Source of the DNA: Lytechinus pictus
Lineage: Eukaryota
Assembly: GCF_037042905.1 (NCBI RefSeq)
Contig: NC_087248.1
Span: 13,578,001-13,642,000 of the forward strand
Direction: 5' to 3'
Length of the DNA stretch: 64,000 nucleotides
The notes below the pieces were generated by a model, which saw only the letters and a list, made by a program, of their open reading frames with translations, had not been told where the DNA came from and searched no databases. A program made the position numbers and the translations under genes. Below, piece after piece: positions 12,111-36,887 of this stretch. Positions within the stretch are counted from its first letter, which is position 1. Each line of letters opens with the position of its first letter.

Positions 12111-14987
12111 GTAAGCAACACACTTCTCAAATTTTCAGAGTTTGATTGTCGGTAGTCATGCATTTTATACATTTTCTAAGCAATGCTTCATTAAACACTT
12201 GTATGCTTAAATCATTCCAATTTGCATTGATTTACTATAATTAAATCATTAAGAAAATCATACTATTTATACTTTTCTAATATTAGTTTTGGTTGATTGG
12301 TTTTATAGTAAAATGAGACAAAATTCTATGTTTTCCATATTAAGTATATTTATGCTGATATTATACAGGGACAGTACCAGGGTATTTGATCAGTCCCACA
12401 TTAGGGATTTTAGCCAGTTTTATCTTGATTATTAAATCATGTGAAATATAATTTTCATAGATGCTCACTTCATCATCTGAAATATATTTCCATGAAGTCT
12501 TAATGTAAAATATATTTCTCCTAGTCATGTGGATCCAAGGAGGGGACGTAGTGGTAGAGACCCCCCCCCCCTCCTCTAATGGCAGTGAAAAAACAAAGGA
12601 AATTATGAAGGAAAGAGAAAAAATAGAAGAAAATAAGGGAGGGGAGAAGATGGAAAAATGAATGAAACAAGAAGAGTGGATAATTAGAAAAAAGAAAGAT
12701 TTCAGCTCATTATGAAGGAAAAAATTCGCCTGCACTCACATTGTATGATGCATGGATGGAAATCTGAGGGGGGGGGGGACGCGTTTCCCCACTCTTTGGA
12801 AAGGGGGGGGGGGAGACACAGTATCAAATTCCCCCCCCCCCCCACACACACACATTATTTGTGGAAGGAGCACAAACAAGAAAGAAATGGGGAAGAAAGA
12901 AACAAATGAAAAAGAAGGAAAAGAGAGGAGAAAAAAGAGGAAAATAAGATCAGGATGGCGAGTGAATAAAAATTAGGTGAGGGAAATACATCTTTCATGT
13001 CACTACAGGTGTATATGAAATTTTTGCACGCTTCATGCTCGCATTGCCTGTTCTTTAAGATACATATCTTGCTCAATAGGCTGATATGAAGCTTAAAAAT
13101 ATCAAGTTTTGAAGTCAATAGACAAAACCGTTTTCGGACATCGAACTTTCATTATTTTGTTTGATTTAGAAATTGATTCAAAGAAGTGTTCTGTAAAATG
13201 TCAGTTTTTTGGTCTGAATAATTATCAGCATTTTCAGTGCGCGCTGCTCTAGCATTGTTTGATTTGTCAAGTACCTGTTTCCTTCGTAAGTTATCAACAT
13301 ATCTCTTTTTAGGTCTGATTGTGATGTATCAGCTAGTGCTGTGCGCTTGCATTTCAATTGGTGATTTATGTATACCTATAATTAGTAATTCTAACAAACT
13401 ACTTAAAAATCCCCCTTTCATGACAGTTTATAAAAAATGTCGGCTTGCGATTTGCGCGTGCATTATTTCAGTTAAAAATATATTAACCCATGTATGCTAT
13501 TCATAATTAAAAAAGTGCTTAAAACGTCCAGTTTTCTGGTCTTAATATCAACTTTTTTTCGCGCTCTCATTAGGCTTATTAGATTAATAAGTAAGATAGA
13601 ATAACATTTTCATGAATTCCTAATAATCAAATTGTGCCTTTTGTCAGAACGGAATATCGACAAGCTTCATCTCGCGCTTAGGAAGAGGAATAGAAAGATA
13701 TTTATAATTTTCATACGATGTGAATGTCCCATTCCTTGGTCAAAGTAATAATGAAAAAATACTAGCTCGCGCTTCGCGCTCGCATCATTTATTAATTGCG
13801 ATCCATATCCACTTCAGAATTTTCCTACTGAGTGCTGGAAATAGTGCTTAAATTCACCCTTTTTTGATAGGAATATCATTTTTTTGGGGGGGAGGGTGGG
13901 CTTAAAATGTCCAGGGGGGCTTAAAGGGGGCTTAAAATGTCCAGGTTTTAGGTCGGAATGTCTAAAATTTTCAGCTCGTGCTCCGCGTTCAGATTATTTA
14001 TTGAAATACATTATGTTGTATATTGGCCAATTTTTCAGCTCGGAATATAAACAATTTTCAGCTCGTGCTTTGCTTTTTTTGCGGCCGATTGCTTCTTGGG
14101 AAAAAGTGTTCCCGTCTTCATCAGTATTTTGAAGGACGTATAATGAAGGAGGATGATCATTGTGACCGCATTGTGTGAGATGAATGTATTTCACTGAATT
14201 CTTTCATATACAGTGTACTAGAAATTGATTGTGATGTTTGAAAAACCGCGGCAATGCAGTGATTATAAATTATTTTCCTTGTAAGCCCTTGTAAGTGTAA
14301 GGACAGAACGTTCTGAAAGGAAATATTAAATTCCATCAAAGGATAGCGGTTCAGGCAAATGGATCCAGGGCACATAAATCTGGTCTTTTTTTTAAAGATT
14401 TTTTTTTCTAAAAAAAAAGAAGATATTTTTCGTTAAAAAAGATGCCATTGTTACCAAAACAAAAATGTCAAGTGATAAATTAAAGAAATTTATTGATTGA
14501 AAAATTTTATCACACACACACATAAACATTACTACCAATTAAAATGACGTAATATGTTCTTTTCTTTTGGCAGATCACAGTTTGTCCAGCCCCCTTCCTT
14601 CCTGTTATAACTTATTATGGTTGTTAGTCCATAGTGTTGTCTGTGGTTTATTTTAGGGGTTTTTAATGTTTTGTTGTTGCTGTTTCATGAATCATGTAAA
14701 TTCATCCATAATCCCTTTTCATCAGGCAAACACAATGTTTATCAACTGCACGGTAGTCGATGATACCACAGTCCAATGCAATGGAACTGATTACCAGTTA
14801 CCCGAGGCGCCCATTGGACCTGATGAACCTCAGTTCTGGATCTACATAGGGGTCTACATCGCACTGATGCTCTTTGCCGGTGAGTGTCGGATGGGGTAGC
14901 CCGGGGGGGGGGGGGGCACGGAGGGGATGTGGTACCATGCAGCAGTATATTATCGGTCTACAGAGGTGGAGTGTATTCCCCCCCCCC

Positions 14988-18000: not shown

Positions 18001-21000
18001 CATACCAACAATATACGTCATAATAAAGACAACGCTGGATCAGTGCGCTTACAGTAACGTCACAATGGTAAAGTAATTGAAATGCGCAAAATTGCCGATG
18101 CAGAATCGGCTTTCTGTTTACACGTAGTAAAAAAGCCGATTCTGCATCGGCTCGCGGTTCAGAACCTACTACTTTGGTGGTGCAAATTGCCGGTTCTGAA
18201 CCGCGAGCCGATTCAAGTTGCTCGCGTTTACACGCTATGAAAAAGCCGATTCAAATGCCGATTAAGTGTAAACACGGTATAAGTGACTCAAAATTTTTGC
18301 TGGTGCCCCCCTCCCCCCAATGCCGTGACTCACGGTACGCCACTGCAAGAACACCATGCATATCAACCACTCACAAATGTCCTAACTTGTTATTTTAGTG
18401 GGGGTAATGTTGAAAGATCCCATCCACAAGAACATTTGTGTCAATCATCCCCCCCAACCAAGAATACCGAACGACACCCATGGTCTCCACGCAAAGACAC
18501 ATACAAAACTTGCTGTTTTAAGAGGGCCTTCAGTACACAAGGCATGAGTAGGCTGCAATTCAGACCCTTTACTCGAGTGAAGGGTTTGCACAGCAGACTA
18601 ATGTTCAGGTGCCATTATCCCAGACGAAGCTTTCGGCGATTCCGGGCGGCGATTACTTCCTGGTTAGATTGTTTCATTGGGTCAGATGCATAGAAAGTAG
18701 CAATTGCTTTTGCTAGGCTTTTGCTTGATTCCGTATGTAAATCAAATGAGCGAGAAAATTAATGCTTTGCCAAAAAGCGTAAGCATAAAGTGAACATTTA
18801 GCATTTGCTTGTGTTTTTCAAGCTCCGTCAGAGCAGCTTGAGCGTTTGCTTGATCAGGGGATTCGCGTTTTATAATCATGTTAATGCACCTGAGGGAGAA
18901 CTCCAAGGTGTACAGTAGCCTACAATACATGAATATATGTTTTTTTTCCTAGTAAGTGCAAAACCAAATACAAACTATATGAATTTCATTTAGAAACAAG
19001 TTAAGGGAATAGTTTGACACCAAGTCTAAGGAAAAGATGTTACATGGGAGGTGTATTTTGCACTGCCACACCTCTAGTATTCGAGTCCAGCATTTGTGTC
19101 GTGTTCGCACCAGGTGACGTCACTTTTATTGTTAAAACCGCTAGCAATTTTGCTCTCTGAAGGCAAGAAAAGGGTTTAAGCACAAGTAAAGGATTAGGCC
19201 GATGCATACGAAATAAAGCAATTGCTAATTCATGATCTTTTGCTTGGCTAGCAATTCCTTTCCAGCAATTGCTACTTTTTATGCATATCTGACTCATTAT
19301 CATGATTGTGCCTCCGTTTCATGGAAGAAAATTGGAAGCGCATCACCGTCGTTGTGATCTCCTATTTCCCAAATCCCATTTGTTTAAATGCAACAATGCC
19401 AAAATACATCATTAGCGCGGCCGTCTTGGGTGGGGGTGTCCTCCTAGAATTTCGAATTGTTTATGGAAACCAGTAGGAAAGTGTCCTCACACCCCATCCT
19501 GCCTTGATTAAAAAAAAATCGCTGCTCATGAAAGAAAAGATGACAAAAGCCTGAAATTTTTACGATCTTCAATATATGCCTCTACGTTTTAGTGATGGCA
19601 GAAGTCCGAATTCGACCAGACAATTTCTTCCCAAATTGCTTTTAGGTTTGATGGCTGGGTTGACCCTTGGTCTTTTGTCTCTGGACATCACTACTTTACA
19701 AGTTCTCTCGACGGCCGGCACCCCGAGTGAGCAGGTCTATGCCACCCGTATCCTTCCACTGGTCAAGAACTCGCATCTCCTTCTCGTCACTCTCATTCTT
19801 GCCAACGCCGCGGCCGTTGAGTCTATGCCCATCTTTCTCGATCACCTCACCAACCCGATCATCGCCGTCGTCGTATCCGTAACGGCGGTTCTCATTTTCG
19901 GAGAGTAAGTTTGTTGGACCTTCCTTTCACAAAATGCAGGAGTATGAATAATAAAAAAGAAATAAATGACATAGAATTTGTATAGTGCACGTACCCTCCT
20001 TGTTCGGTGCTCAAGGCGCTCCTAGTCTATACCGATTCCGGTTCTCACAGCCTTTCTAGGAATTACTTGCTGTCGGTACCCATTTACCTCACCTGGGTCT
20101 AGTGCAGTCGAATGTGGGTAAATTTCATGCTGAAGGAAACACGCCATAAAAAAATATGCTGGCTTGGAATCGAACTCGCGTCCCCCAGATTGAAAGACGA
20201 GAGTCTTAACCACGAGACCAAGACCACGACGCCCCACATGTATAATCATGTTCGGTGCCCTTTTAAGGGATTCAAGTTGTATTATTCAAACTCATTTTGC
20301 CCCCGGGCCGTCGTTGCGAGTCAATTAATTATAGCAAGGTTCGTGATGAAAAGCCACTTCTGGGAAAAGTCACTTTTGGGGCTTTCGCGCTCTGTTAATT
20401 CATTGAGAACTTCTTGAACCCTGTGCACCAGTCTTTTTCCATCATCAATCATACCTTCTTCCCCTATATACCCCCGCAAAATACTGTCTGACAGTCCTCC
20501 TATTTTTTCCTGGATTGGCAAAAAGCACTAAAGAAAAGAAATCAACACTCTACTGCTTCTGAACTAATAAATCCCATCATAACCATAGTTGTTACACTTT
20601 GTTTTTCCCCCTTTTTTTCCAAAAAGCAATGTACTTTTGATCTTTATCGAAGAGTTCTTTGAATGTATAGAGATGACGACTTAATTTATTCATATATTTT
20701 ACGATATGCAAGGGACTACGCATCCCAATGAACTTCTGACTGACTGCAATATTAAGCACTCTTTCCCATTGATACCTGCATCTTATCATTTTCTTTAGAA
20801 TCATTATCTTCCATATCATTTTCTTTATAGTCCTTATCTTTCATATTGAATAACTTATAGTTATTATATTTCATACTGTTTTCCCTTATTATATTGTTGT
20901 TTATTATATTCCTGTACAGAGTACTGCCGCAGTCTATATGCTCAAAATACGGATTGGCTATTGGAGCAAATATGGCATGGTATGTTCTATATCTACAAGG

Positions 21001-24000
21001 ATATGATTCTGACCTAGCATCGCATCGTGTGATGTTGACTATTAATTCTGAATTATTTGAGTCTAGCCCTATGTAAGGCGGTATACGAGCTTTCAAGTGT
21101 GCGTGGCGCTTAACCGAAATGGGCACTATTGTAGTCTAATTGTTATTTTTTAATTCTTAATTCCCTATCAAATTGTCTTTTTTTTCTTCGGTCTTCTTTT
21201 CTTACTTTTAATCAGTTTGAAAACCAAAGGAGAGTAAGCGGAACAACGTCATCTTCATACAATTATACCTGACAAACAGAGAGTGTTATTTTGCTCTCGC
21301 CCATGTTTTATAGAACTGATAAGTCTTGCCAGATGGTCTGACATCAATGACTGTTAAAAGAATGACAGCATGCAAGCCTTTTAAGATGTTTAAATCTAAA
21401 CGACTTGAATGCGGGGGCCTCACAAAATCACCTGTAAATCTTTACTCATTCAAGATCTGCGACATTTTCTAAAAATCTTTAAAGTCAATGTAATCGATCA
21501 AAAAACATTTTAATATTGAGCCATTTGACCAGCATCACTATTTGTTCCGTTTCTCTGTAGGTTTGTGTATATCCTCATTGCCCTAACCTTTGTTATTTCG
21601 TGGCCAATCGCCAAATTGCTGACTCTACTTCTAGGAGAAGGAACGGGGACCTTCTACCGGAGATCAGGTCTGTAGTTGTGCCCGGTTTTCACTTTCGTTT
21701 TATCATAATATTATGAAACCAAGAACATGTTTTTACCCTTTTACGATGTTATTAAAACATTAACAAAAAATCATCCGGCGAGACACGCGCAACGAAACTC
21801 CCTGCACTTCAGATGGAATACGGCATTGAATTGAGATCTCGTACATTGAGATATGGCTTTGATTTTTTTTCATGTTTAGAATATTGGTATCAACCGTTGC
21901 AAAAAAAAAACCCATACAAAAATCGCGATAGATAACGAATTTGTAAGAATGTTATTTGGAGGTTTGAATTCAACGGGACATCAGGCTGTAGTCACTGAAG
22001 TGGAAGTGGGCCCAAGTCAGGCGATGAGCTCACCATTCTCGTTTTCCTTGTTCTTTAAAATGTTGCTTAACCTTCTGGAAACCTTTGTGCTTACCTTGAA
22101 TGTTCGTGATCACCTACTGTTAAATTCTTATCAGGTTAAAAATATGCCCTCTATCAATTTTCTAAACAGAATTAAAAGCACTAATTGATATCCAGGCTAC
22201 CTCCCCCGACGCTGCTGCAGAGGATAGCGCCCTGACACAGGACGAAGTGCTGATCATCAAGGGTGCTCTAGATGCCGAGGGCAAGGTTGCTAGGGATGCT
22301 ATGATACCTCTTGATAAGACCTTCATGCTGGACCACTATGGTATACTTGATAGGAAGATCATGGAGCAGGTTGGGAATAAACGCATTTCACATTTATCGG
22401 GTTAAGAGGGTCTGTTTGGGGGTAAAGTTTGGTGGAATACCTAAGGTATTTACCTTTTGTGAAGGTGATGCGTCAAACTATCAATTCTAGTATAAATATG
22501 GATGTAGCTATCTTTCCGAAGAAAAATTGAGAAAAATAGCGTCATATCACGGATGAAGTAATGGTTCGTCTCATCCACTGAAACAAAACGGTGGTATTTG
22601 TTTTATATTCCACATCTGGTAATCCTTTAATAATTTAAAAGAAAGCAATGATGCCTACACTTAAATTGCAGGAGTGACGTATTTTTCTGAATTAAAATTT
22701 GAATTGTTAATGATTGACAATGCATGTATCTGCAGTTTATTTTGGAGAACTTAAATTATAAACGTTGCTTAATCTTCCAAATTGTGTTTAGCTCATGGCA
22801 AACGGATACTCGCACGTTCCCGTCTACAAAGACGACCGTAAGAACATCCTAGGGGAGTTTGTGGTCAAGAACCTTATCATCCTCGATCCAGATGATAACG
22901 AACCCATCGCGGCATCTCTCGAGAAATACGGTCGCCCCCTCCACTCCATAACGGCTACCAAGCCCCTGTATAACATTCTAGACGAGATGATGGATGGGAA
23001 ATATCGCATGGCGGCGATCTACGACACTCCGGCCATCTTGCCGACCATAGACGAGGCTGACAGTAACGCTCCAAGTACACCAACACTACCAACTACAACG
23101 TCACAGCCTGGAATGGTAGGAGATGTGTTTGGATAATTCGGAGTTGTTTATATACACCCGTAACTTTACTGGCCTGGAGGAGATATTGGTTGGTTTTGAT
23201 AGTTATGATGGCGTGATCGTGGCGGTGGTGATGATGGTGGTGGTTATGAAGATGGTGATGATAATTGTAATGCTTATAGTTGTGAAAGCGGTGATGATCA
23301 TCAACATCGTCATGATCTTGATCATGGTGATCATGATGATCATGCTGCTGCTGATGACGATGATGATTAAGATAATGGTATAAAACCCTTGAAGTAATAA
23401 AAGTAACATCCCTTATTTCGGCCAAAGAATTATTAAAGACGTCTGTTAATGGCGTAATATTCTAAGGGTTACACTTTAGTATTCCACTTGCTCTCATAGC
23501 CATCGTATTTGATAAGTCTATCTTAATAAAAAAAAGTTTGCAAATATCAATTCCCTAGGAAGTTATCAGGCTAGGTTGTTAAAAGGTCTTATTGCTGAGG
23601 ATTTGATGTTTCTGATCACGAACTTTGCAACTTTTTTTTGTCTCGAAGTTTGACGATATTGTTTGCTAATCTTCCTTGCTGTCACCGGTCAGATTTACGA
23701 CCGGAGTTACCGGAATGGCCAGCAAAATTCGCAAAGTTCGTGCGAACCGGTAACTCTACAGTAATATCATCGAATTCAGCGACAAATTTTGTTATAATGA
23801 CGTCTATATGAGTATGATCGATGACGATGACTTCAACGATGAAGTCGTACCTATCCTACCTATGTGATAAATTCTAGCGTCGTAAGCCCGTTCCTTCAGG
23901 CACGGCCATTGCATCCAATGGTGATAATTGCTCTTAATAACTGTTTCATCAACAGGACATTATCGGCTTCATCACGCTGTGGAATGTCCTGGAGGTGGTT

Positions 24001-24692
24001 CTGGGTGAGCCAATCATATCATCCGATGACGTCTACGCCAGTGTACGCCAGAAGGTCCAGATGGGTAAGGTTAAACTGGTCCGGTCACACAGCATGATTC
24101 CGGCTATCACGGCAAGCAATACAGGCTCCATCAACTCATTTCCACCTCCACTAACGGTAAGTATGGCATGTATGGTGTGGCAAACACCCGAGAAGTCGTT
24201 GGTGATAGACGGGTTGCAATGGTTACTATGGTGTTGATTGTAGTTTGATGGACATGATGCATTGGAGGGATTGTAATTTGAAGATGAGATTCGAAAAGGG
24301 TCTATGATCCTTGTAGTTTATAGAGACGACACTCCGAGTTGAATCAACATAAAAATCTAGTGACTCATTATTATAACAGGGAGGAATGATGGTACAATGA
24401 GAGAATGAGTAATAATACTTAGAACAGAAAACCCTTGATTGGTTGATGACGATGTTGCAGCCAGTGGCGAATTTAGAAGCTGCAATTATTCGGAGCGGAC
24501 AATTATTTACCGGCAGCGATTGCATGTTGAACCATGATAGTCCCTTTCCTACCATCTGCGTCTTTGATACTCCTCCTCTCTCTACATCTAATCCACCTAC
24601 TAACATGTCTTTTTCTAATCGTTTTTTTTTTGTAGCCCGAGCCGAATAGTGCAGAAAACACACCACTTCTGTCTTCAGGAAACATGGTCTGA
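12108..24692 (+). CDS. CNNM/DUF21 transmembrane + CBS-pair metal (Mg2+) transporter family protein, copy A, 454 aa, compact Mam3/CBSDUF-like architecture
   Basis: Exons 12108-12110 (ATG|GTAAGC, less certain), 14726-14879, 19646-19904, 20920-20979, 21561-21667, 22170-22369, 22792-23115, 23956-24156, 24636-24692 (TGA). Phases all join (1365 nt). Motifs: AGLMAGLTLGLLSLD, HLLLVTLILANAAA, LIFGEVLPQSIC, WPIAKLL, ELKALI, DEVLIIKGALD, GYSHVPVY, IGFITL. Confidence 0.92.
12760..14100. mobile_element. Older, decayed relative of the 16870-18345 hAT-like family
   Basis: Poly-G/poly-C head, a purine-rich tract, and repeated degenerate units (TTAAAATGTCC..GAATATC..TTTTCAGCTCGCGCTTCGCGCTCGCA) matching 17330-17830. 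Ends are not sharp. Confidence 0.55.
16870..18345. mobile_element. Non-autonomous hAT-like DNA transposon with 8-bp TSD
   Basis: TIRs CAGTGGCGTA / TACGCCACTG flanked by direct repeats CAAGAACA (16862-16869, 18346-18353). Internal repeats read TTTTCAGCTCGCGCTTCGCGCTCGCA. Confidence 0.85.
17866..18279. mobile_element. Foldback MITE (PIF/Harbinger-like) nested in the hAT-like element
   Basis: 28-bp TIRs TACCGTGTTTACACTTAATCGGCATTTG / CAAATGCCGATTAAGTGTAAACACGGTA with internal palindromes. The left end is partially duplicated at about 17847-17865. Confidence 0.8.
19965..20236 (-). mobile_element. tRNA-derived SINE (related family) in a CNNM copy A intron
   Basis: Minus strand: GGGCGTCGTGGTC..GTGGTTAAGACTC..GAGTTCGATTCC head and GACCCAGGTGAGGTAAATGGGTACC core. 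A degenerate plus-strand copy lies at about 33112-33290 and a tail-only fragment at about 15067-15165. Confidence 0.75.
23203..23378. repeat. Degenerate (GAT)n microsatellite
   Basis: Direct reading; explains the spurious His/Met-rich ORFs here. Confidence 0.85.
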
Positions 24693-25521: not shown

Positions 25522-26594
25522 TTAAACGTAGTTGAATGAATCAAGGCTTCCATTGTACCAACAGGTGTACACACTAAAAGTCATCGTTTATATGTATAAG
25601 GTATGGATATTTGTTTTGGTTGTTGAAAGTATGCATAAGAACGTGTATGCCCTTTTCAATTGTTGACTAATGGTAACTGGAAGTAACTGACCAATATTGT
25701 TTGATTCAGGTGATTGGGATTTTATAATTTTTCGTTTAATTTGCTAATGAACTAGGAAAAATATTGTGAGAGTATTTTCCTGCTAGTAATTGAAAGTTCT
25801 CTCTTCCTTTAACCACTGAATCACTTTGTCGCTGATGAACCTCTTGAAGAAAGAGAGATTTCGGTCATCAAGAATAAACCATGAGTATCATGACTTTAAT
25901 ATCAAATGAAAAGTTTTAATTCAAATAAGAATCATTAAGACCATAAGCGAACAGGGAATTTGTTACGGGAAATATGTGACTTCATTATCTTTTCAAGATT
26001 CATCAATTAAATAATCACAACGTTAGGTCATCAAATTAAAAATCCTGTCAGAATAATGTACTTAATAGTTCAGGTGAATTAATTTTGGGAAGATATGGTT
26101 TCAAGTTATATTTTGAGATTTCGGGGATCATTAATATTTTCATAAATTCATAGACACACTTACATGCTTGAACATGACGGATGAAGTTAATCGTATTGTC
26201 TTTTTCATTTACACATATAATAAATTGAATCTTTGTTTAGAATTTTACCAAAATTTGTACATGCACACATATTTAATTTCCATGGTTCACCCACCATGCC
26301 CACCATGCCAAAATAAACGTAAATGCAAAACGTTCCCACAAAGGACTACATTGAGATGTCCTCGCTCTCTAGATCTTTGTTTGACTAAAGGTCAAGTGAA
26401 AGAATTCCGACTGTTTGTATATCGTGTTTGTACTTAGAGGTAAAGCTAGTCCTTCGGCTTTTAAGTCGCTCTTTGGAAAATTTATATTTATATTTAACAT
26501 GTTTAATGAGAATAGTGTAATGATTTAGCTTTACTGAAGTCACACAGTGCTATGCTACATTTTCAAAATGCCAGTCTCACAAACGGGCCAATAT

Positions 26595-26763
26595 CAGGGG
26601 CCACGGAACGGTTTTTCAAAGTGGGGGGGGGGGGGGGGGGGGGGGGCTGACCATGCAAAAAATCACAATCATATGGTAATTTTTACGTTTTTGTACATGG
26701 TTTTGGAAAAAAAGGGGGGGGGCTGAAGCCCCCCCCCCCCCCCCCCCGCTTCCGCGGCCCCTG
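26595..26763. mobile_element. Small poly-G/poly-C MITE
   Basis: TIRs CAGGGGCCACGGAA / TTCCGCGGCCCCTG with flanking AATAT direct repeat. A similar decayed element lies at about 36586-36859. Confidence 0.7.
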
Positions 26764-28665
26764 AATATCAACCGACATGCGCTTGGCCTTTAATTCTGTT
26801 CGGATTTTAATCTCTGTTGTGGGCCTTTCGCGTCTTAATCCTTCAGGAGTCATACAAGGGACTCTAGCACCATCGGGGTTTTTAGAAAGACCCCGTAGTA
26901 AAAAAAGAAAATCATGTTTTGATTTGGGAGGTATCCCTATTTTGTGTCAAATATCCAAGTACCAAGCATATTTAGTCTTGTAATTGAAAAATAATTTTAT
27001 ATGCTCTAACAAATGGAACAAAAATTATGGCGATGGAAATAAAATGATGATTTATTATCCTGAATGAAAATGAAGATGACTGGTGATTCACAGTTTTATT
27101 GAATGTGAAGAAACTCTTAATGCAGCGTGTGAAGAGTTTTGAAAAGAATTGCTTACGAAGAGAAGGGAGAGACAAATGAGGGGGGGGGGTAGAAGAGAGG
27201 GGAAGATATAGATAGGGAGAGAGAGACGACGGGATGGGACTAGAAGGTGGGGAGAGTGAGGTATTAAATTTATTGAGGGTACTGCGATAAAGCGGCAGTT
27301 TGGATTTTGAGTGGGTATAATATTCCCTAAAAATCTAATTCAAAGGAACGTGGAGAAAAACGTGAAAAATATCAATCTGTGCTTTATGGTTAGCACCCCC
27401 TTGTATACAATCAAAGCCGGACCCTGAGTATGGCCACAAAATCCCTAATTTTCACCCTTAAACCATATTTGTAATTATTGCAAACAAGACCAATTTGATA
27501 CCAGTATTGTTCACGCGGCAACCCCCAACCCATCCATTTTGTGCTTAGACTTTATTCGACACACGATGACGAAAACACTGCATTTGAACACTGCATTTGA
27601 AGAAAATGTGTGACGTCATCACTTTAGCAGAATGTGCGAATCCTTTTCTAACATGTCTAATGTACGTCATCTTGTCCATTTATTTACTATAAAGCGTCTA
27701 CAGACAAAACTTCGTTGATTGATAAGCAGTTCAAACGTTCACAAGCCAGGTTGTACGGTATATCGTACGGCACACCGCCTTTTTATCAATATGGTCTACA
27801 CAGTTTCTCCATAAAATTAATTATCAATTTGAGAAATATGCTGGTAATTTTACATAAAGCACATTCCTTTCCAAAGAAAAACATAGCGGATAAATTGAAC
27901 GATGTGAATCTTTTTTTTGTGGGGAATTACGTACGCCTTCTTCTGATTTTTTTTCAAATATATATTTATAATCTAATATTACAAATGATTTTGTATAGAT
28001 AATACTGAAAATGATATTTTGAATTGAAATTGAATTATCAACTGAATAATGAATGCCTAAGACGGACAATATTCCCCATGCAGTCTTTTCAAATGATATT
28101 AACTATATTGCACATGTTTAACGTAAAAAAAAGGGATTCTAGCGTACAACAGACATATGATTATTTTTTTCTGTCAGCAACTATATGACTAATTTAAAAG
28201 TATAAAAAATGAAGTTCATTGAAAATCAAAATATTTAAGATTTCAGAATGAGAATCACTCCAAAACCGACCTTGTATGCCTGTCTTTAACAACGGCGGTG
28301 TGTAATTTTCTTTGGAAAATAAGGTATTACGATTTCCGACGCTTAGTTGACAAAGAAAAAATTATACTTTAGACTTGTTATAATAAAAGAGGTCACAGTT
28401 TTAAAGTGATGATAAAGACTGGTAGTTTATCCATATAACTTTCAGACGTTCTTGGATAATAAAATGATGGCATTGTCAAATTTCATTTAATGAACACCAG
28501 CAGTGTCATTCGCTCTGACCTTATTTCAACTGCTTTGCGGGTTGTCTGTTTCGCATTGTTCCTCTATACCTGAACAGTATACTACAATCTCTTTGCAATT
28601 TGTAAGTGAGTTGTGATTGGTCATAATCTTATGCCTGAAGTTCACCGACAATTGCGCCTGGCTCC

Positions 28666-31600
28666 ATGGCAACAGCTGCCATGTCTTCATCTACTATAGA
28701 TCTCGGTAACGTGAGTGAGATCACGGAACATTCTGGAGAACCAACGTGCAATATTTCCGTTGTGCCGATTGCCCCTGTTGTTGAAGATCCCGATCAGGGA
28801 TGGTTCTGGGTGAATCTGATACTCTTCACCATCTTCACCTTTGGTTCTGGTAAGTGATTGGTAGAAAATACTCATTTATCATGCATGTTAATCTACATTC
28901 TGTTGGTCACTGCTGATCGGTGTCACATCTGTTCGGTATACAGTAGCAATTTCAAAATAAGAGAGTTCAATTGCTTGCATGGCTCACCATCGGTACCTTC
29001 AACTTAAATACTACTCAAAATCACGGTTTTATTAGGCATGAGACATGTTTAATCTTAAACAGTGTTAAAGGTGATGAAAATATCTACAACACTGTCGGTT
29101 TACCTTCCTTGTATATACGGTTCGTATATGGTCTTGGTATAAGGATGATTTGTTTAAATTTCACAGTGTCGTGACATAAATTAGTATTTGACCCATTTTA
29201 GGTGTGTGTTATTGTACCATTGAATCCGTTATGAATAGCCATGCTACAAATCTGAGGGGGGATACTACTTTAGAGTTTTTCTGTCATTTCTACTGCAGTA
29301 CAAAATTTAGGAAGAAATGGGAATTTGCTAACTTTCCTACCGCCCATCGTCAACAGTCTTCATGCTCATAGCGGCAATGCGTCCAGAATCATGAACAAAA
29401 CTACCGCTCTCTTAAAACCCAATCACTTATTTGCGTTCATTATACAGGTCTATACTCGGCCCTGACGACAAGTTTCTTTTCCCAGGACCTCACCAGGCTT
29501 GAGGTATGTCTTCGCCAGGGTACCCGAAGCGAAAAGGTCAACGCCTCCCGGGTCATGAGGCTTCTGAAGTACCCCAATTTACTGATTGTCACGCTCAACA
29601 TGGGTAACGTAGCCGCCATCGTGTGCCAGCCAATCGTCTTAGCCTACATTATTAGCCCGATACTGTCCGTTCTTGTTTCAGCAATAACTGTTTTCATCTT
29701 CAATAAGTAAGACATAGATCTTATCGTGCCATATTGTGTTTACCGGAGGCGGCGGCGTGACTCAAAGGAGAGTTGCCATAAAATCGGCAACACATATGAC
29801 ACAAGAAATCGAAAAAAGGCGATCTCGAATGGAATTGTTTTTTAAGTTATGAATGCCAGTTGCATTTGTCGGATACATTTAATAAGTCTGTTGTTTTGCT
29901 GCGAGTGAATAACTTGATTTCCATTATACATTGTCTTCTGAAAAGCAAAATTATCAAATCTAAATCTGAAAATTACCACCAATAATTGTAAAAATTAATA
30001 TAGTTGTAAACAGCATGATCCGTTAGAAATATTGCCGTGTAATGAAAATTATTTGGGTGTTCCTATTTCCTTTTTAATTCTTAGGTTATTACCTCAGCTC
30101 GTTGGTGATCGACATGGATTGGTTCTTGCCGCAAATATGGCATGGTAAGAATAAATTTATAAAAAATTAATTTGCCTATCTCCTAATTTGAATGTAAGCC
30201 TAAGGATCAATTTCACTTTACTGAAAAAAAAAGCTCAGTATCGATATGAAAATTTAATCTGATATATATTACCAAATACCCTCAACTTTTACGGGATGTG
30301 ACTATTAAAATTTAAACGATCCCGCGGTTAACGGACTCTCGTCGTCAAAACAATAAGGGGGGGGGGGGTTAGTTGATAACTATGAGTGGTTGACAAAATA
30401 ATGAAATGGTTCATATAATGTAGAAGAAATACAAAAAGGTGAATGTGGGCAAATGGGGAAGTCTTTCATTATCAGCTCTTAAACCAAGTAATTTTCGTCA
30501 AGATGGGAAGGCCATGTCCCCTTATCTACCCGCTCTTGCTATTTAATGTCCATTGATATTGCTGGTACCTATAACGTTGATGTTTTGTTTTGTTATCCTG
30601 TCTATCAACAACATTAGGTTTCTTATGTTACAAGTCTAGCTCATCTGGCTAATGTGAAAGAATAGTCATGATAGTTTTCGCCATAATCAGATAATGCAAT
30701 ACATAATGGTAACGTATGGATTCTTTCGTCTAGCAAAGATTAATAAGGTTTCATCAATTAGATTCAAAGAATGAAATTAGAACCTATCATGGAAACAATA
30801 AGCAAAATTATGCATGTAAGATATGATTAAATCTGTTAACAAAATATTTCAAAGAATGATTATTAATTAATTATTAATTGATTATTAATTTCTTCAATCA
30901 TTTCCAGGTTCGTTTATATATCAATTGCAGTGTTTTTCATCATAGCTTGGCCTGTTGCCATGCTGCTATCAGTGTTAATCGTGAAGAGGAAAGACAGATT
31001 TTACGAGCGAGCAGGTAAGAAAGAATTGGATTATCACAATGGATAGGAATATTAGCATAAATGAAGGTGTCCATCAAACTATTTTGGACCTGAACATGCA
31101 AAGACACATGTTATGGATATTTAGTACCTCCCTCAAAGAGTTGATATTGGCTTTTGCGTGATTAATGAGGAAAACTGCGTTTTATTCGTTATTAGTGAAT
31201 TGATATCGACTAAAATGGGGTTACAAGACAATTTATGATTAAAACAGAACGTTCCATGAGTCAAGAAAGTGCCGCCAAATGTATTCGTTAGAGACCGTCC
31301 GATGTTCCTCTTCCTCTTCTCTTCCTATTCAGCGTACCGCATGTAGGCATATATCCATCCGTATTCCATCGTTATTTCTGACATTGTAATTTTCATATAG
31401 TACAAAATCCATTTAGATACTCTGTAAAGAGTCACTGAGCCACTGTACCTCTGCTAAAAAAAAATTGATCGTGATAAAATTTTTAGTTCATATTCACATG
31501 GACATTAATCGTCTTTAGAAAGAAATTGAAGGACAAAACTCACTCAGTCTGTACCATAAAGATTAGGTGATAGGATCTACCCGGATTAGGTCCAATAGTT

Positions 31601-34600
31601 TGGAGGGCCTACCATCATTAACAAACTTACATCAGCGTTGCCATTTGGGGATTAGATGTCTATGGGAATGAAAAAAAAAATCTTTGGGGATTAAAGATAA
31701 ATTTGGGTTTTTATTTTCCATTTTAGGGGATTTTTGGTGACAAGCAATAACATTCGCATTTTTTCAATAATATAACGCTAATACTCAGATCTACTGTAAA
31801 GAGTTAATGTATAGAATCAGCAATAGTGGATAAAATCCACTATGACTTCAGCGCATGTCTTACGCAATTCAACCGATCAATTAAGTAAACTGAACTTAGT
31901 TGTTCGATACAATGGTACTGTTGCAATCTACATTGCATCGAAACCTACTAAAAAGAATTTAGTGTGAACAAACGAGCACACAATTACTAGTTAGGGGCAA
32001 TAACAAAAATAATGATTCATAAGTCTTCTTTTTCAGAAATTATAGTGATTTGAAAAGGTGGGAATTTTTGGTCCAATTTTGAGATTTTTTCAAGTACCTT
32101 TTGGTGATTTCTTCAGCGTGGACCTGGCCTGGCAACACTGACTTACATTGCTCCCGAAATGGTTTCATATCTATTTTGGCTGACGAAGAATGGGAGCCTA
32201 CTCCTTAATTGAAGTACCTAATTAGAGATGATGCTAAAGTCGGGGACGTCATTTTGGAACACAAGATCATATAGACACGAGTACCATATACAAGAATCGA
32301 ACACTCATTAAAAACAAAATGTGTCGAGTAGAACCTTTCTTTGTCCCGTACATCGAACATTTTAAGGTTCTTCAGAGAAGAAGAAAGAAGTTTTAAACAG
32401 TCCTTTGAGCACTTTTGGCTCTGCAAAGAATCCTTTAAGGTTCTTATACATCCTATGGAGTTCTTGGTGGTGTAAAAAGCTCCATAGGATGTATACAGAA
32501 CCTTATACAAAATTGGTGGGGGTCTTCACACTATCAAGATCCCCTTACGATGTTGAACATTAACGTGATAGAAGGGTTCCTTGGAGAACCTTAAAAGGTT
32601 CCACATACGGGACAAAGAAATGTTCTAAAATCTTTTAGAGTGAATATTTATATCTTCAGAACTCAAGGCCCTGATAGAGCTCCAGATGACATCACCAGAC
32701 GCTGCAGCTGAACAGCATACCCTGACATATGACGAAGTTCACATTATCAAGGGAGCATTGGATGCTGAGAGTAAGGTTGCCATGGACGCCATGATACCAC
32801 TGGATAACGTTAGCATGTTGGACTATGATGGGGTTTTTGACAGGAAGACTATGCAGTTGGTAGGTAAATTGTGCAAGGTTTGTAGTGGTGAGGAAGGTAG
32901 GTGATGGCGGCAGTAGAGTGCATTTGTAACGGTTGGGGATAACTTTGTTGATAGTTTCGATGATGGGGGATGAAAATAGGTGAGTTGTGTGGGGATGTGC
33001 GTGTGTGTGCGTTTGCTTCTGTGATTGCGTGGGTGTGCTTGATTGTAGGTGTGTTTATGTATGTGTGTGTGTTGATCTGGCAAAGTGTAGACGTGTATCA
33101 AGTGACGTGTTGGGAGGTGTCGTGGCCGAGTGGTCATGGCGACTGACTACATAATGAGAGAGACCAGAGTCTAATTCCGTGCACAGCCCATGAGCAAGGA
33201 ATTTTATCTACATTGCTATTGTATCTCGCAGCAAGTAAATGGAATACTATGCATTACTGATACCAGCGTCGCGACGCGTAAGTGATAGAGAATGGAGATC
33301 AGAGAGTTTATGAAAAAAATATGTCGCACTGTCCATGCTGACGATGTTTGTTGGGAGTAACCACTAGGACTGACGTTTTCTTGATTTTTACTTGTTATAG
33401 AAGAAGTTTGTGGTGATTGGAAGGTTTCGTAACGATGTATTGAAAATTATTATTACTAGAAAGTCACTATAGTAATTGTTGATGTCACTTGCCTCAAATG
33501 CCATGCCTGCAACAACCTTTCAAAAATCACTTTCATTTCAGTGGCAGCTCGACAGAGTGTTTTCAACAAGCATTATATTAATAATACCAGCATAATCAAA
33601 ATGACAAATTTTACCAAATGTCGTTGATTCTTTGTTGTCCATTCTCCTACTTCAGTAGCTTGCTACACAGAAATTCTCGCACGTTCCAGTCTATAAGAAC
33701 CACCGTAAAAACGTCCAAGGCGAGTTTGTGATCAAGGAACTAATTCTCCTCGACCCCGAAGACCAAGAGCTAATCTCTACGTCGTTCAACAGATTCGGTC
33801 GTTCTCTCCATTTCATTCCGTCAAGTAGACCTCTATATGATATATTCGATGATATGAACCTTGGGCGTTACCGAATAGCTGCCGTGCTTGATGATGACAC
33901 AGAGGTAAGTTTTCAAGACCTGAGGCTCATTTCATAAAACTAAAACAAATTTTAAATAACAGTTAAACGCTAATAAAGCCATTCAATTTGATTGGCTGAA
34001 AGTAAACTCGTTATAGACATTGGCCATTTGCTATTGTTAAAAGTCTTTATGAAACGAGTGCCCGTTTCACATAGAATTAAAATATTTTAATGCTAGGAGT
34101 CCACTTGGGCAGCGCCAGTTCGCTCCCAAAGGAAAGCGGTTGTGGCGCGTTGTTTCGCCAATAACGTGCCTATTGGCGTGCCAAATTCAATTGGTGCTGT
34201 TACGAGTAATCCGGCACTCGTCAGTTGGAGGCAAATTGAGTCACTGCACGCCAATAGGCACCTTATTGGCGACACTAGGCGCCACAGCCGCTTTGCATTG
34301 ACGGAACCTTTATGTTTTGAAAAGGGGGACATAGTCTACTGATAAGACTGGATACCACTTGGGGGCTCCCATCTCTGCCTGTCTTCAATGATCCTTCTAC
34401 CCCTCTCACTTCATCTCTCTTCTCCTTTATCGTTCTCTCCATCTATCTTATTCTTTCCCAATTTTCCTCTGTCTTTCTGCTTTAAGCCCCCTTCTGCTCA
34501 GTGACCTGATTGACTACAGCGTGATTCGCTTTACCCATCGATCCAGTCCTGTATCATTTTGAAACGCTTGAAAGTGGCAATCTTGTTCTCCATCCTTTCA

Positions 34601-35187
34601 TGCTCTTCCCCATCCTTTCATGCTCTTCCCCTTTTCCAGGTTGTTATCGGATTCCTAACGCTACAGAACGTCTTGGATGTGATTCTAGGTCAAACTCGAG
34701 CCCTTAGTCGACGGGACTCATCTGGTACGATGAAGATGGTCCAGTCTGGATTACAACTTGCCATGGAACGCCGGAGGTCCCTTCACGCTAGCAATACCCT
34801 TGTTTCTGAAGGAGTAAGATATTTTCTAGAGAATTCGTAGAGTCATTCGTGGTCTTATTAGTCATCTTGTTGTGGGTAATGTGATGGCGGCGGTGGGGGG
34901 TTTTGGGCAGATGAAGTCCATATACATGATATAATTGCCCTTCCTAGAAACAGTTTAAGACATGTTAGACTGCGAATTATATTCCTATATGCTTTCGTCA
35001 ACTTAGCTTTGTCAAATTACAAATCTTGGGAATGGGCTATGTGGAATGAATGCTTGTTGCGTCTTAAAAAAATAAAGACTTGCCTCATGTTACTGACAGG
35101 ATAGGAGCCTTAGATTTATTTCTTTTTGTTCTTCAACAGAATCATCGACCTACTGAAATTACCCCTTTGATCAAAGAAGTTTCATGA
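28666..35187 (+). CDS. CNNM/DUF21 + CBS-pair family protein, copy B (tandem paralog), 425 aa, degenerate ion-binding motif
   Basis: Exons 28666-28849, 29448-29706, 30085-30144, 30908-31014, 32660-32859, 33659-33904, 34640-34813, 35140-35187 (TGA), 1278 nt in frame. Internal exon sizes 259/60/107/200 are identical to copy A. Motifs: SGLYSALTTSFFSQD, LLIVTLNMGNVAA, LLPQ..GLVLAANMAW, WPVAMLL, ELKALI, DEVHIIKGALDAE, FSHVPVYK. Confidence 0.88.
32302..32642. mobile_element. CACTA/EnSpm-like non-autonomous element in CNNM copy B intron 4
   Basis: CACTC.. / ..TTTTAGAGTG termini, AA 2-bp flanks, and many AGAACC/GGTTCT subterminal repeats. Confidence 0.6.
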
Positions 35188-35446
35188 TCAAAATGATTTC
35201 CGAGACTTAAACTAACGTGGATGAGATGGCACCAATTAGAGATGAAGTGAATTTCTACAGTCTAAGAATACAGACCTCATGCATGTATACCCCAAACGAC
35301 ATTCTAGATTAGCCAATGGAGCATAATAATAATCTTACGTTAATAAAAGAATAAGAGCAACAGAATAAGACATATATAAAGTAGTATTAGTTAAGGTAAA
35401 TATAGTAGGATCCCTAGTTGCCACGTTGGTGTTGAAGGTGTTAGTT

Positions 35447-35577
35447 TTATTATCATTATTATTATTATTAGTAGTAGTAGTAGTAGTAGTAGTAGCAGTA
35501 TAGTAGTAGCAGCAGTACTAATAGTATTATTATTACTATCATCATAATTATGATTAATATTATTACTAGCACTATTG

Positions 35578-35613
<36 letters not shown>

Positions 35614-35875
35614 TAATTACTACTGCTAGTACTACCATTTTTAGTTTTATCCGTTTTGGTAGTGGTGGTGGTGGTGATGGTAGTAGTAGTAGTAGTAGTA
35701 GTACTATAGTAGTAGTAGTAGTAGTATAGAAGTAGTAGTAGTATTAGAAGTAGTAGTAGTAGTTAAGTAGTACTAGTAGTAGTAGCTGTCGTATTAGTGG
35801 TTGAAGTAGTAACAATAGTAGTAGTAGATGCAGTAGTAGTAGTAGTAGTAGTAGTAGAAGTAGCGGTTGTTATAG
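35447..35875. repeat. (TAG)n / (CTA)n / (TAG)n compound microsatellite
   Basis: Direct reading; blocks alternate in orientation. Confidence 0.9.
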
Positions 35876-36887
35876 TATTTTCTTCAAAATGAACAGTTTC
35901 AAATATCTTACAATATTTCATTATCATTCTTTTTTACAAAATAATACAAATGCAAATTGATAAAAGTGAAGTAATTGGTTATATTAATCGCAATTCTCGA
36001 TATGGTGGCGCTCTTCACAATCTCCAACTCCACTCCAGTTTGATGAAGAGTTTGGTAAACCTGGGTCCCACTTATCGGTCCCACAGCACACAGACTAGAT
36101 ACTAATTGTACCAAGGTCGTCAATTGTAAAAATCACCTGTATAATTACTTGCAAAGATATGTATCCTTGCAGGGACCCTGAAATTTACCACAACATTAGA
36201 AAACATGATAATTAATAGGGTGGAATAAGTGGTTGCATAGAACAAAAATACAGCTTGTCACCAGTCCTACCGTAACATTAGCCACACTCTTTGGGAAAAT
36301 CAAGTTCATTTAATATCACTAGTGTACAGATGGGGGGGGGGGGGGTGCCCATGGACTCCCACAACTTTTCACGACCAAGAAAAAAAAGGAAAGAGAAAGG
36401 AAAAAGGTTAAAATATCATACCATGTTTTAAATATTGTGTCTAAATTTCTCTTGTTTTGATTAATATTTTGCATTAAAACGGTCAGAATTTTAGAGTTTT
36501 AAACAACTTTTCCCAAATACGCCGTGTCTGACCCCCTCACCATTGTTGGCTCATTAGGCCATTGATTAATATACAATAGATATATCCAGGGCCTGGTAAC
36601 GATTTTTTGAGTGAGGGTGCCAAGGTTTTCACTACAAACTGGAGGTAAAATCGGTTCGGAGAAAGTTGTAAATAATAAAAAAAGGGGGCATTTAACTATA
36701 AGTTAAGGTCATTTTGGTGTTGTACGTTTCCTTTTTTTACACATCTTTCAGAATACCCGGGGGTGCTGCCTATGGAGAATAATACAAGCAGCACCCCTAA
36801 GGATTTTTCTTAAGGGGGGTGTGCTTCAGCACCCCCCCCCCCCCTTCCCTGGGTCATGGATATATCATCATATGCGACATGAGTTGA

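What the first reader, a model, noticed from the sequence alone, without database searches (positions are those of the whole stretch)
29690..30100. Copy B has GE->NK at the CNNM Mg2+-binding site, mimicking the human loss-of-function CNNM2 E357K allele
Seen: copy A reads LIFGE|VLPQ (GA|A across the intron). Copy B reads FIFNK|LLPQ (AAT AA|G, 29702-29706 + 30085) in exons of identical length. Established: the Gly-Glu of FGE-x-x-PQ coordinates the ion in CorB/CorC structures, and CNNM2 p.Glu357Lys causes hypomagnesaemia. Inference: copy B probably cannot bind Mg2+ at this site. A Lys there could act as a tethered cation or switch the substrate, yet the ORF and all splice sites remain intact, which implies retained function.
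Basis: partly seen in the sequence, partly recalled or inferred. Interest (0 to 1): 0.72.

Follow-up and report, generated by a model that had tools for sequence, protein, structure and literature searches.

The report
Sea-urchin CNNM paralogue with charge-reversed ion site
One of two neighbouring sea-urchin genes for a magnesium-transporter-like membrane protein carries Asn-Lys where almost every other family member has the metal-binding Gly-Glu, and this change is an expressed, selectively maintained feature shared by sea urchins that split about 250 million years ago, not damage or an error.

Summary
Copy A reads LIFG-E(GA|A)-VLPQ and copy B reads FIFN-K(AA|G)-LLPQ, in exons of 259 and 60 nt in both genes. 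The window is Lytechinus pictus. Copy A is LOC129258981. My copy B model equals XP_054752670.2 (LOC129258417) residue for residue.

- **Splicing:** spliced contigs of run X1 show the 29706>30085 joint and four other joints.
- **Conservation:** NK is not private. It occurs in L. variegatus, S. purpuratus, a strongylocentrotid-like mRNA contig, two Diadema species and a second paralogue, B2. About 220 other homologues have Glu there (one has Asp).
- **Selection:** codons vary synonymously (AAT/AAC, AAG/AAA). dN/dS is 0.08-0.14 overall, 0.08 in the membrane domain.
- **Wider change:** B also lost two other conserved membrane acids (Glu>Val120, Asp>Ala/Asn127, the latter equivalent to CNNM2 D335). 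It gained Ser61, Asn112 and Asp156, and its C-terminal acidic patch became basic.

Pseudogene, private mutation and assembly error are all rejected. B very probably cannot bind Mg2+ in the canonical way. It is a neofunctionalised, echinoid-specific CNNM (Mam3/MGR-type) subfamily. What it now does, altered substrate or coupling versus a regulatory subunit, is inferred, not shown. No literature on it was found. This is a new variant of a known kind. The scan had already noted this same stretch (s1-313820).

The parts
28666..28849 (+). Copy B exon 1 (ATG at 28666). Encodes the N-terminal luminal/extracellular part and the start of TM1, including Ser61 (28846-28848).
   Evidence: Model equals XP_054752670.2. 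The X1 loose end before 29447 matches the end of this exon.
29448..29706 (+). Copy B exon 2 (259 nt): TM1 to the first half of TM3. Holds Ser65 (29456-58), Asn112 (29597-99), Asn115 (29606-08), Val120 (29621-23, replaces an invariant Glu), Ala127 (29642-44, replaces the Asp equivalent to CNNM2 D335), Asn147 (29702-04) and the first two bases of Lys148 (29705-06).
   Evidence: (Pfam CNNM, E 3.4e-8).
29707..30084 (+). Copy B intron 2 (378 nt, GT..AG, phase 2). It splits the Lys148 codon.
   Evidence: Joint 29706>30085 in an X1 contig.
30085..30144 (+). Copy B exon 3 (60 nt): third base of Lys148 (30085), LLPQ with the conserved Pro151, and the gained Asp156 (30107-09).
30908..31014 (+). Copy B exon 4 (107 nt): end of TM3 and the juxtamembrane helix.
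   Evidence: (joints 30144>30908 and 31014>32660).
32660..32859 (+). Copy B exon 5 (200 nt): linker and start of CBS1.
33659..33904 (+). Copy B exon 6 (246 nt): CBS pair.
   Evidence: (joint 33904>34640).
34640..34813 (+). Copy B exon 7 (174 nt): end of CBS2 (GFLTLQN motif) and the basic C-terminal segment.
   Evidence: (joint 34813>35140).
35140..35187 (+). Copy B exon 8, including the stop codon. Encodes ...TEITPLIKEVS.
14726..14879 (+). Copy A first large coding exon. The annotated Met lies on a further upstream exon that I did not locate.
   Evidence: residues 2-454 of P0156 (LOC129258981) map exactly.
19646..19904 (+). Copy A exon 2 (259 nt), ending GGA GA (Gly at 19900-02, first two bases of Glu at 19903-04).
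20920..20979 (+). Copy A exon 3 (60 nt): third base of Glu (20920), then VLPQ.
21561..24692 (+). Copy A exons 4-8: 21561-21667, 22170-22369, 22792-23115, 23956-24156 and 24636-24692 (the last includes the stop codon).

Best explanation
Copy B (L. pictus LOC129258417) is a functional, expressed member of an echinoid-specific subfamily of Mam3/MGR-type CNNM (DUF21 + CBS-pair) membrane proteins. It arose by duplication of the canonical gene (copy A) before the Diadema-camarodont split, so it has been maintained for roughly 250 My. In this subfamily the cation pathway of the membrane domain has been rebuilt. The TM3 Gly-Glu that binds Mg2+ in CorB/CorC is Asn-Lys. The invariant TM2 Glu is Val. The Asp at the outer end of TM2 (equivalent to CNNM2 D335) is Ala or Asn. 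Several hydroxyl or amide side chains (Ser61, Ser65, Thr68, Ser70, Asn112) and a new acid two turns below the Lys (Asp/Glu156) are fixed. The protein therefore cannot coordinate Mg2+ in the canonical way. The Lys ammonium most likely sits in the former metal site as a built-in positive charge. It would be hydrogen-bonded by the retained Ser/Ser/Asn ligands. That would turn the cavity from a divalent-cation site into one that handles a different ligand (an anion or polar solute) or uses a different coupling (Lys as a proton carrier). Shown here: identity, splicing, conservation, purifying selection, intact predicted fold. Inferred: loss of Mg2+ binding, and above all the new activity.
For: - **Sequence and splicing:**. 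The model is identical to XP_054752670.2.
- **Orthologues with NK:** L. variegatus P0151, the strongylocentrotid-like mRNA contig P0001/L005, S. purpuratus P0270, Diadema setosum P0152, D. antillarum P0153, and B2 P0154/P0274.
- **Other homologues:** 217 have GE, plus one each of AE, SE and AD. None has Lys. Profile searches of 5.8 billion proteins found no further NK clusters.
- **Tree:** the echinoid A+B clade has support 100/100. The B clade including Diadema has 100/100 on a stem of 1.37, against 0.19 for A.
- **Synteny:** the tandem A>B arrangement is conserved in L. variegatus (L006) and S. purpuratus (L009).
- **Selection:** B dN/dS is 0.083-0.109 (L. pictus vs L. variegatus) and 0.12-0.14 (vs P0001). 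By region it is 0.08 in the TMD and 0.06 in the CBS pair. The N and K codons turn over synonymously (AAT/AAC, AAG/AAA).
- **Conserved-but-different sites:** of 87 family-conserved TMD columns, A keeps 71. B keeps 29, and 15 are fixed to a new residue. Ser61, Ser65, Thr68, Ser70, Asn112, Val120, Asn147 and Lys148 are invariant in 8 B-type sequences. Ser61 is a gain at the position of MtCorB Ser21 / CNNM2 S269, on TM1, which is not part of the dimer interface (PMC8242095).
- **Fold:** the AlphaFold model has pLDDT 81, above 90 in the TMD and CBS pair. Its best structural matches are MtCorB and CNNM2 CBS pairs.
- **Chemistry premise:** PMC8242095.
Against: - No functional data exist, so loss of Mg2+ binding is deduced from homology only.
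- 43 of the 87 family-conserved TMD columns have become variable in B. This also fits partial relaxation, as expected for a protein that no longer transports.
- Expression is very low in three deep RNA-seq runs: one junction read in about 6% of each run.
- In liposome assays, some CorB binding-site mutants (S26A, S30A, N76A) increased rather than abolished transport. The site is therefore not all-or-none, although E118A did reduce transport.
- I could not inspect model coordinates, so the orientation of Lys148 and any pairing with Asp156 are untested.
Confidence: 0.55

Rival explanations
1. B is a non-transporting 'pseudo-transporter'. It keeps the fold, the dimer interface (TM2/TM3), the CBS-pair nucleotide sensor and the sorting signal. 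It acts only as a regulatory subunit, for example by heterodimerising with the neighbouring canonical copy A, or by modulating another channel as vertebrate CNNMs do with TRPM7.
For: All three conserved membrane acids are gone. Half of the family-conserved TMD columns are relaxed in B. The tandem linkage with A is conserved in three species. The CBS2 ribose motif G-h-h-T-x-x-N is retained. CNNMs are known to regulate TRPM7 through their cytosolic domains (titles and abstracts).
Against: Polar cavity residues on TM1, away from the dimer interface, are invariant across about 250 My, and one (Ser61) is a gain. TMD dN/dS (0.08) is as low as in the CBS pair. Diadema setosum has the NK gene with no A-type gene within 10 kb on either side, and no A-type protein appears in either Diadema annotation. 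B can therefore exist without A next to it.
Confidence: 0.3
2. B is an incipient pseudogene, or NK is a private mutation or an assembly error.
For: It mimics a human loss-of-function allele. RNA depth is low in three runs.
Against: NK is present in at least 6 species or paralogue lineages, with synonymous codon turnover. dN/dS is 0.08-0.14. The ORF is intact with eight GT..AG exons identical to the RefSeq model. Spliced transcripts are seen in two species.
Confidence: 0.02
3. A-to-I RNA editing restores Gly-Glu in the mRNA (AAT AAG could read as GGT GAG if three A's were edited). On this reading the genome-encoded NK would be a switchable form.
For: This is only the codon arithmetic: every base that differs is an A that would have to read as G.
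Against: The X1 spliced contig across 29706>30085 shows no A>G difference at 29702-29706 or 30085. The orthologous full-length mRNA contig L005 reads AAT AAG. Contigs do drop rare variants, so low-level editing is not excluded.
Confidence: 0.02

Closest known systems
Human CNNM2 p.Glu357Lys (hypomagnesaemia with seizures)
   Same: It has the same residue change at the homologous position: the invariant TM3 Glu of the G-E-x-x-P pi-helical turn becomes Lys. From a GAG codon it would be the same single G>A step.
   Different: The human allele is a rare pathogenic variant on an otherwise canonical protein. In urchins the Lys is fixed, about 250 My old and under purifying selection. It is accompanied by Gly>Asn and by replacement of two other membrane acids, one of which (Asp>Asn in Diadema and B2) also mirrors the CNNM2 D335N disease allele.
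Archaeal/bacterial CorB/CorC (MtCorB 7M1T, TpCorC) Mg2+ transporters
   Same: The DUF21 three-helix membrane domain plus juxtamembrane helix plus CBS pair. MtCorB is the best Foldseek match. Ser/Ser/Asn ligand positions and the Pro of the pi-helix turn are retained.
   Different: The carboxylate ligand Glu111 is Lys. The CorC_HlyC C-terminal domain is absent. This protein is eukaryotic, glycosylation-type and has a long N-terminus.
Yeast Mam3 / Arabidopsis MGR (DUF21/CBSDUF) vacuolar Mg2+ transporters and their metazoan 'At4g33700-like' orthologues
   Same: B is nested by phylogeny within the animal branch of this subfamily. It has the same domain order, no CNBH domain, and a conserved C-terminal x-T-P-L-[LIFY] motif.
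   Different: Every other sampled member, including urchin copy A, keeps GE, the TM2 Glu and the outer Asp. B does not. Vacuolar localisation and Mg2+ transport of Mam3/MGR are taken from the literature listing (PMC9804957, title and abstract) and from general knowledge, not tested here.
Transporters in which a Lys or Arg side chain occupies a lost cation site (e.g. ApcT Lys158 versus the LeuT Na2 site; CaiT Arg262)
   Same: The concept is the same: a tethered positive charge replaces a bound cation and changes coupling. This is recalled from memory as a lead and was not tested.
   Different: These are unrelated folds and families. No such case has been described for CNNM/CorB in the papers I could search.

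Membership tests
CNNM/CorB (Pfam PF01595 DUF21 + CBS pair) | DUF21/CNNM transmembrane domain | tested here: met
   P0268 scores 73.8 bits against PF01595, E 1.8e-20, cut-off 28.4. It aligns with CNNM4 182-346 at E 2e-15.
CNNM/CorB (Pfam PF01595 DUF21 + CBS pair) | CBS-pair (Bateman) domain after the membrane domain | tested here: met
   The Pfam CBS hit is below the cut-off (22.2 versus 24 bits). However, the model superposes on CNNM2 CBS pairs with TM-score 0.86-0.90 and rmsd 1.5-2.2 A, and the G-h-h-T-x-x-D/N motif is present as GFLTLQN.
CNNM/CorB (Pfam PF01595 DUF21 + CBS pair) | Invariant Glu of the TM3 pi-helical turn that coordinates Mg2+ (MtCorB E111, CNNM2 E357) | tested here: not met
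   Lys148 in all B-type sequences. The paper calls this Glu invariant from archaea to humans.
CNNM/CorB (Pfam PF01595 DUF21 + CBS pair) | Invariant Pro three residues after that Glu | tested here: met
   K148-L-L-P151-Q. Pro is invariant in alignments A1 and A2.
CNNM/CorB (Pfam PF01595 DUF21 + CBS pair) | Mg2+ transport activity | not testable with these tools
   Needs liposome, yeast or cell efflux assays.
Mam3/MGR-type (metazoan 'DUF21 At4g33700-like') subfamily | Phylogenetic nesting and shared architecture (no CNBH domain, C-terminal PLL-type motif) | tested here: met
   Tree, hit lists, consensus.
Mam3/MGR-type (metazoan 'DUF21 At4g33700-like') subfamily | Subfamily-invariant TM2 Glu (A-V-E-x-M-P) and outer Asp (F-L-D) | tested here: not met
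   Glu (100% conserved in 108 other members) is Val120. Asp (94%) is Ala127, or Asn in Diadema and B2.

The most novel reading that the evidence does not exclude
The NK-type proteins are a new functional class within the CNNM fold. They would be transporters or sensors with a charge-inverted central site (Ser/Ser/Asn/Asn/Lys) that handle an anion or use Lys as a proton shuttle. They would have been invented once in the euechinoid stem and kept, in Diadema possibly as the only Mam3-type gene. A link to echinoid-specific ion handling, such as high-Mg calcite biomineralisation or acidic vesicles, is conceivable but has no support yet.
Probability: 0.25. Interest if true: 0.8.

Novelty: new variant of a known kind. 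Interest (0 to 1): 0.6.

Why it matters
The TM3 glutamate is described as invariant from archaea to humans and as the Mg2+ ligand. Its Lys substitution causes human disease. Here nature has kept that substitution, embedded in a coherent set of co-changes, under strong purifying selection for about 250 My.

This gives CNNM researchers a natural, matched pair for study: canonical copy A and charge-reversed copy B lie side by side in a laboratory-tractable urchin, L. pictus. With it they can ask what the central site does, whether the fold can carry other substrates, and whether CNNM proteins have transport-independent roles. It also warns annotators that 'DUF21/CNNM' in echinoids does not imply Mg2+ transport.

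Tried and rejected
- **Pseudogene, private mutation or assembly error:** rejected by orthologues, dN/dS and transcripts.
- **RNA editing back to GE:** no A>G in the spliced X1 contig or in the orthologous mRNA contig.
- **NK-type proteins outside echinoids:** none found in the representative library, in two single-protein searches or in one B-clade profile search. Starfish, crinoid, hemichordate, mollusc, cnidarian and sponge members all have GE.
- **Literature on urchin CNNM/DUF21:** none found.
- **Paper for the CNNM4 cryo-EM entries (9y9d/f/g, 11gq):** not in the library.
- **Species of the Logan runs SRR6173504 and SRR31798690:** not found in papers.
- **Raw RNA-seq runs X6-X8:** almost silent over the gene, with one junction read. 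They add little and do not show absence.
- **YN00 and dS for A-versus-B and Lytechinus-versus-Diadema pairs:** saturated, so no dN/dS could be obtained for the B stem branch.
- **Direct residue alignment to MtCorB:** the profile hit ranked 18th and its alignment could not be printed. The mapping rests on the E-x-x-P motif and the CNNM4 alignment.
- **Complex prediction:** not run. A-B heterodimer prediction between paralogues of a homodimeric family would not discriminate between the hypotheses.
Full report
**What is in the sequence**

The window holds two tandem, intron-bearing genes on the + strand whose exon 2 translations hit Pfam CNNM/DUF21 (PF01595).

- Copy A exon 2 (19646-19904) ends TTC GGA GA|GT. 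Exon 3 (20920-20979) begins A GTA CTG CCG CAG. This gives L-I-F-G-E-V-L-P-Q.
- Copy B exon 2 (29448-29706) ends TTC AAT AA|GT. Exon 3 (30085-30144) begins G TTA TTA CCT CAG. This gives F-I-F-N-K-L-L-P-Q.
- Exons 2-5 are 259, 60, 107 and 200 nt in both genes.

**Identity of the genes**

Copy A maps residue for residue (2-454) onto Lytechinus pictus LOC129258981 (P0156). Its first large coding exon lies 4.8 kb upstream, at 14726-14879. My eight-exon model of copy B (28666-35187) translates to exactly XP_054752670.2, 'uncharacterized protein LOC129258417 [Lytechinus pictus]' (P0268). So the window is L. pictus.

Searching the whole assembly finds four CNNM-domain loci:
- A
- B
- a second B-like gene, B2, 6.3 Mb away on the same contig (L004, LOC129258497)
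- a classical CNNM2/4-like gene (L001, IFGEIIPQ)

**Transcription and splicing**

Contigs of run X1 laid on 29300-35250 carry precise GT..AG joints at 29706>30085, 30144>30908, 31014>32660, 33904>34640 and 34813>35140. A loose end before 29447 reproduces the end of exon 1.

The own-genome search shows no intronless B copy, so these contigs are cDNA. No A>G difference is reported at the N or K codons. Three deep RNA-seq runs of the same species label are nearly silent, with one junction read in about 6% of the data. Expression is therefore low or tissue-restricted.

An independent full-length, intron-free 1631-nt Logan contig (L005, P0001) encodes the orthologue of a strongylocentrotid-like urchin. 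It is 86-97% identical, exon by exon, to the S. purpuratus gene.

**Is NK private?**

No. NK is present in every B-type sequence found:
- L. variegatus B (P0151, P0267)
- P0001 and P0272
- S. purpuratus XP_030851178.1 (P0270, FNKILPQ)
- Diadema setosum (P0152) and D. antillarum (P0153)
- B2 of L. variegatus and L. pictus (P0154, P0274/5)

Among the other homologues with a readable motif, 217 have GE and one each has AE, SE and AD. None has Lys. No further NK clusters exist in the 5.8-billion-protein collection.

The codons vary synonymously while the residues stay the same: AAT in Lytechinus and P0001, AAC in Diadema and B2, AAG versus AAA in B2.

**Phylogeny and age**

In a maximum-likelihood tree (LG+C20, 35 sequences), echinoid A and B together form a clade with 100/100 support. 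The B-type sequences, including Diadema and B2, form a 100/100 clade on a long stem (1.37 substitutions per site). The A stem is 0.19.

A retains the ancestral states, so B is the derived copy. The duplication predates the Diadema (Aulodonta) versus camarodont (Carinacea) split. The crown-euechinoid node is dated around the Permian-Triassic boundary (PMC8940180).

The head-to-tail A>B arrangement, about 4 kb apart, is conserved in L. variegatus (L006) and S. purpuratus (L009). In D. setosum, no A-type exon lies within 10 kb on either side of the NK gene. Neither Diadema annotation yields an A-type protein.

**Selection**

Exact spliced mapping recovered the coding sequences, and the exon structure is conserved.

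| Comparison | dN/dS | Note |
|---|---|---|
| B, L. pictus vs L. variegatus | 0.083-0.109 | dS 0.12-0.15 |
| B, L. pictus vs P0001 | 0.12-0.14 | dS about 1.1-1.2 |
| A, L. pictus vs L. variegatus | 0.15-0.21 | |
| A, L. pictus vs S. purpuratus | 0.09 | |

By region, B shows 0.08 in the membrane domain and 0.06 in the CBS pair. Only the N-terminal 44 residues are near neutral. B evolves about 1.8 times faster than A at the protein level over the same depth, but it is clearly constrained. The pseudogene reading is rejected.

**What else changed**

I compared B-type sequences with 108 other subfamily members and the three A-type sequences. Of 87 membrane-domain columns conserved at 85% or more in the family, A keeps 71. 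B keeps 29, has 15 fixed to a different residue, and 43 are variable.

The fixed changes include:
- Gly>Asn147 and Glu>Lys148
- the subfamily-invariant TM2 Glu>Val120
- the Asp at the outer end of TM2>Ala127 (Asn in Diadema and B2)
- Ala>Ser61, Gly>Ser70, Leu-Leu>Phe71-Phe72 and Leu>Asn112
- Thr/Ser>Asp/Glu156, a gained acid eight residues after the Lys

By the constant offset of 73 from CNNM4 numbering, Ala127 is the position of the CNNM2 D335N disease allele mentioned in PMC8242095. Ser61 and Ser65 occupy the positions of CNNM4 S196/S200, that is MtCorB Ser21/Ser25, the TM1 Mg2+ ligands. Asn115 (Ser in B2) occupies the TM2 ligand position.

The conserved acidic C-terminal stretch of the family (E-D-x-x-E-E-L-x-Q-E-E-I-x-D-x-E) reads Q-N-V-L-D-V-I-L-G-Q-T-R-A-L-S-R in B. 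All this shows a concerted removal of cation-binding acids, not a single hit.

**Fold**

An AlphaFold2 model of the L. variegatus orthologue, built with a 60-sequence alignment, has mean pLDDT 81 and above 90 throughout the membrane domain and the CBS pair. Lys lies in the middle of the long TM3 helix.

Foldseek ranks MtCorB (7M1T) first. CNNM2/3/4 CBS pairs follow with TM-scores up to 0.90. I could not access model coordinates, so side-chain geometry is untested.

**Literature premise**

In MtCorB the Mg2+ is coordinated by Ser21, Ser25, Ser71, the Glu111 carboxylate, and the Ser21 and Gly110 carbonyls. Glu111, Ile112 and Pro114 are described as invariant from archaea to humans. E118A (TtCorB) reduces transport. 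[quoted passage not shown] E357K is listed among the hypomagnesaemia mutations in PMC6429129.

Gly itself is not invariant: TtCorB has Ser117. The weight therefore lies on Glu>Lys.

**Interpretation**

- **Shown:** B is a real, spliced, annotated gene. NK is an ancient, fixed and selectively maintained state. The fold is intact.
- **Inferred with high confidence:** the canonical Mg2+ site cannot form.
- **Inferred with moderate confidence (about 0.55):** the cavity is still used. This rests on polar residues on TM1 that are invariant across about 250 My. TM1 is outside the TM2/TM3 dimer interface, and one of these residues (Ser61) is newly gained. Membrane-domain dN/dS is also as low as that of the CBS pair. 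On this reading Lys148 serves as a built-in positive charge, giving a new ligand or a new coupling mode.
- **Main rival (about 0.3):** B is a regulatory pseudo-transporter, possibly pairing with copy A. The many relaxed columns and the conserved linkage favour this. The invariant cavity residues, and Diadema's apparent lack of an adjacent A, argue against it.

**Novelty**

The genes are in RefSeq only as 'uncharacterized' or 'DUF21 ... At2g14520-like'. No paper in the searchable library deals with them. This is a new variant of a known family, not a new kind of system.

The same stretch was already noted by this scan (s1-313820). Related notes on the same window are s1-313799 and s1-313846.

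Noticed in passing
G000:C4:7275519-7275896 (L004); L. variegatus L008: There is a second NK-type paralogue, B2 (L. pictus LOC129258497, FFFNKVLPQ). It has a roughly 100-residue Asn/Ser/Thr-rich repeat at the N-terminus (many N-x-S/T sites) and a CBS1 region with a 13-residue deletion and strong divergence. It branches after Diadema and before the Lytechinus/Strongylocentrotus B split. No S. purpuratus counterpart was seen in the protein database.
   Followed up: partly
L007 (Diadema setosum OZ188204.1, 9.50-9.53 Mb): The Diadema NK-type gene has no A-type (GE) gene within 10 kb on either side. Neither Diadema annotation yields an A-type protein. Diadema may have only the NK form of this subfamily, or its A gene lies elsewhere or is unannotated.
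   Followed up: partly
window 34640-34700 (B) and 23956-24010 (A): In both urchin paralogues the CBS2 acidic cluster, which makes ATP binding Mg2+-dependent in CNNM2 (E570/D571/E574), is reduced to a single acid. A reads T-L-W-N-V-L-E and B reads T-L-Q-N-V-L-D. The ribose-binding Thr and Asp/Asn are kept. This suggests nucleotide sensing may be Mg2+-independent in the whole echinoid clade, which sits on a long stem (1.15) in the tree.
   Followed up: partly
window 14700-14726: Copy A's annotated initiator Met is not encoded at the start of the 14726-14879 exon, which is preceded by an AG acceptor (the genome reads CAG|GCA AAC...). The ATG must sit on a further upstream exon that I did not locate. 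An in-frame Met follows four codons later (MFINC).
   Followed up: no
G000:C12:626610-627122 (L001): This is the classical CNNM2/4-like gene of L. pictus. It has one large first exon (466-aa open frame) containing the extracellular domain and the whole DUF21 domain, with a canonical IFGEIIPQ motif.
   Followed up: partly
window 16810-17053, 26516-26790, 36241-36457: A repeated element containing a poly-G/poly-C run (translations with GGGGGGG and PPPPPP) occurs upstream of A, between A and B, and downstream of B. It is probably an interspersed repeat.
   Followed up: no
window 23120-23380 and 35369-35900: Long trinucleotide-type simple repeats (open frames of poly-Val, Ser, Asp or Thr) lie in intron 6 of A and just downstream of B's stop codon.
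   Followed up: no
window 29530: The X1 transcript contig differs from the assembly by C>T at a third codon position (AGC>AGT, Ser, synonymous). Three further differences in 29447-29631 are not itemised by the tool. This is probably allelic variation between individuals.
   Followed up: no
window 34055, 34270-34300: RNA reads of runs X7 and X8 map only partly in intron 6 of B and have unrelated loose ends. They are most likely transcripts of a dispersed repeat rather than of B.
   Followed up: no
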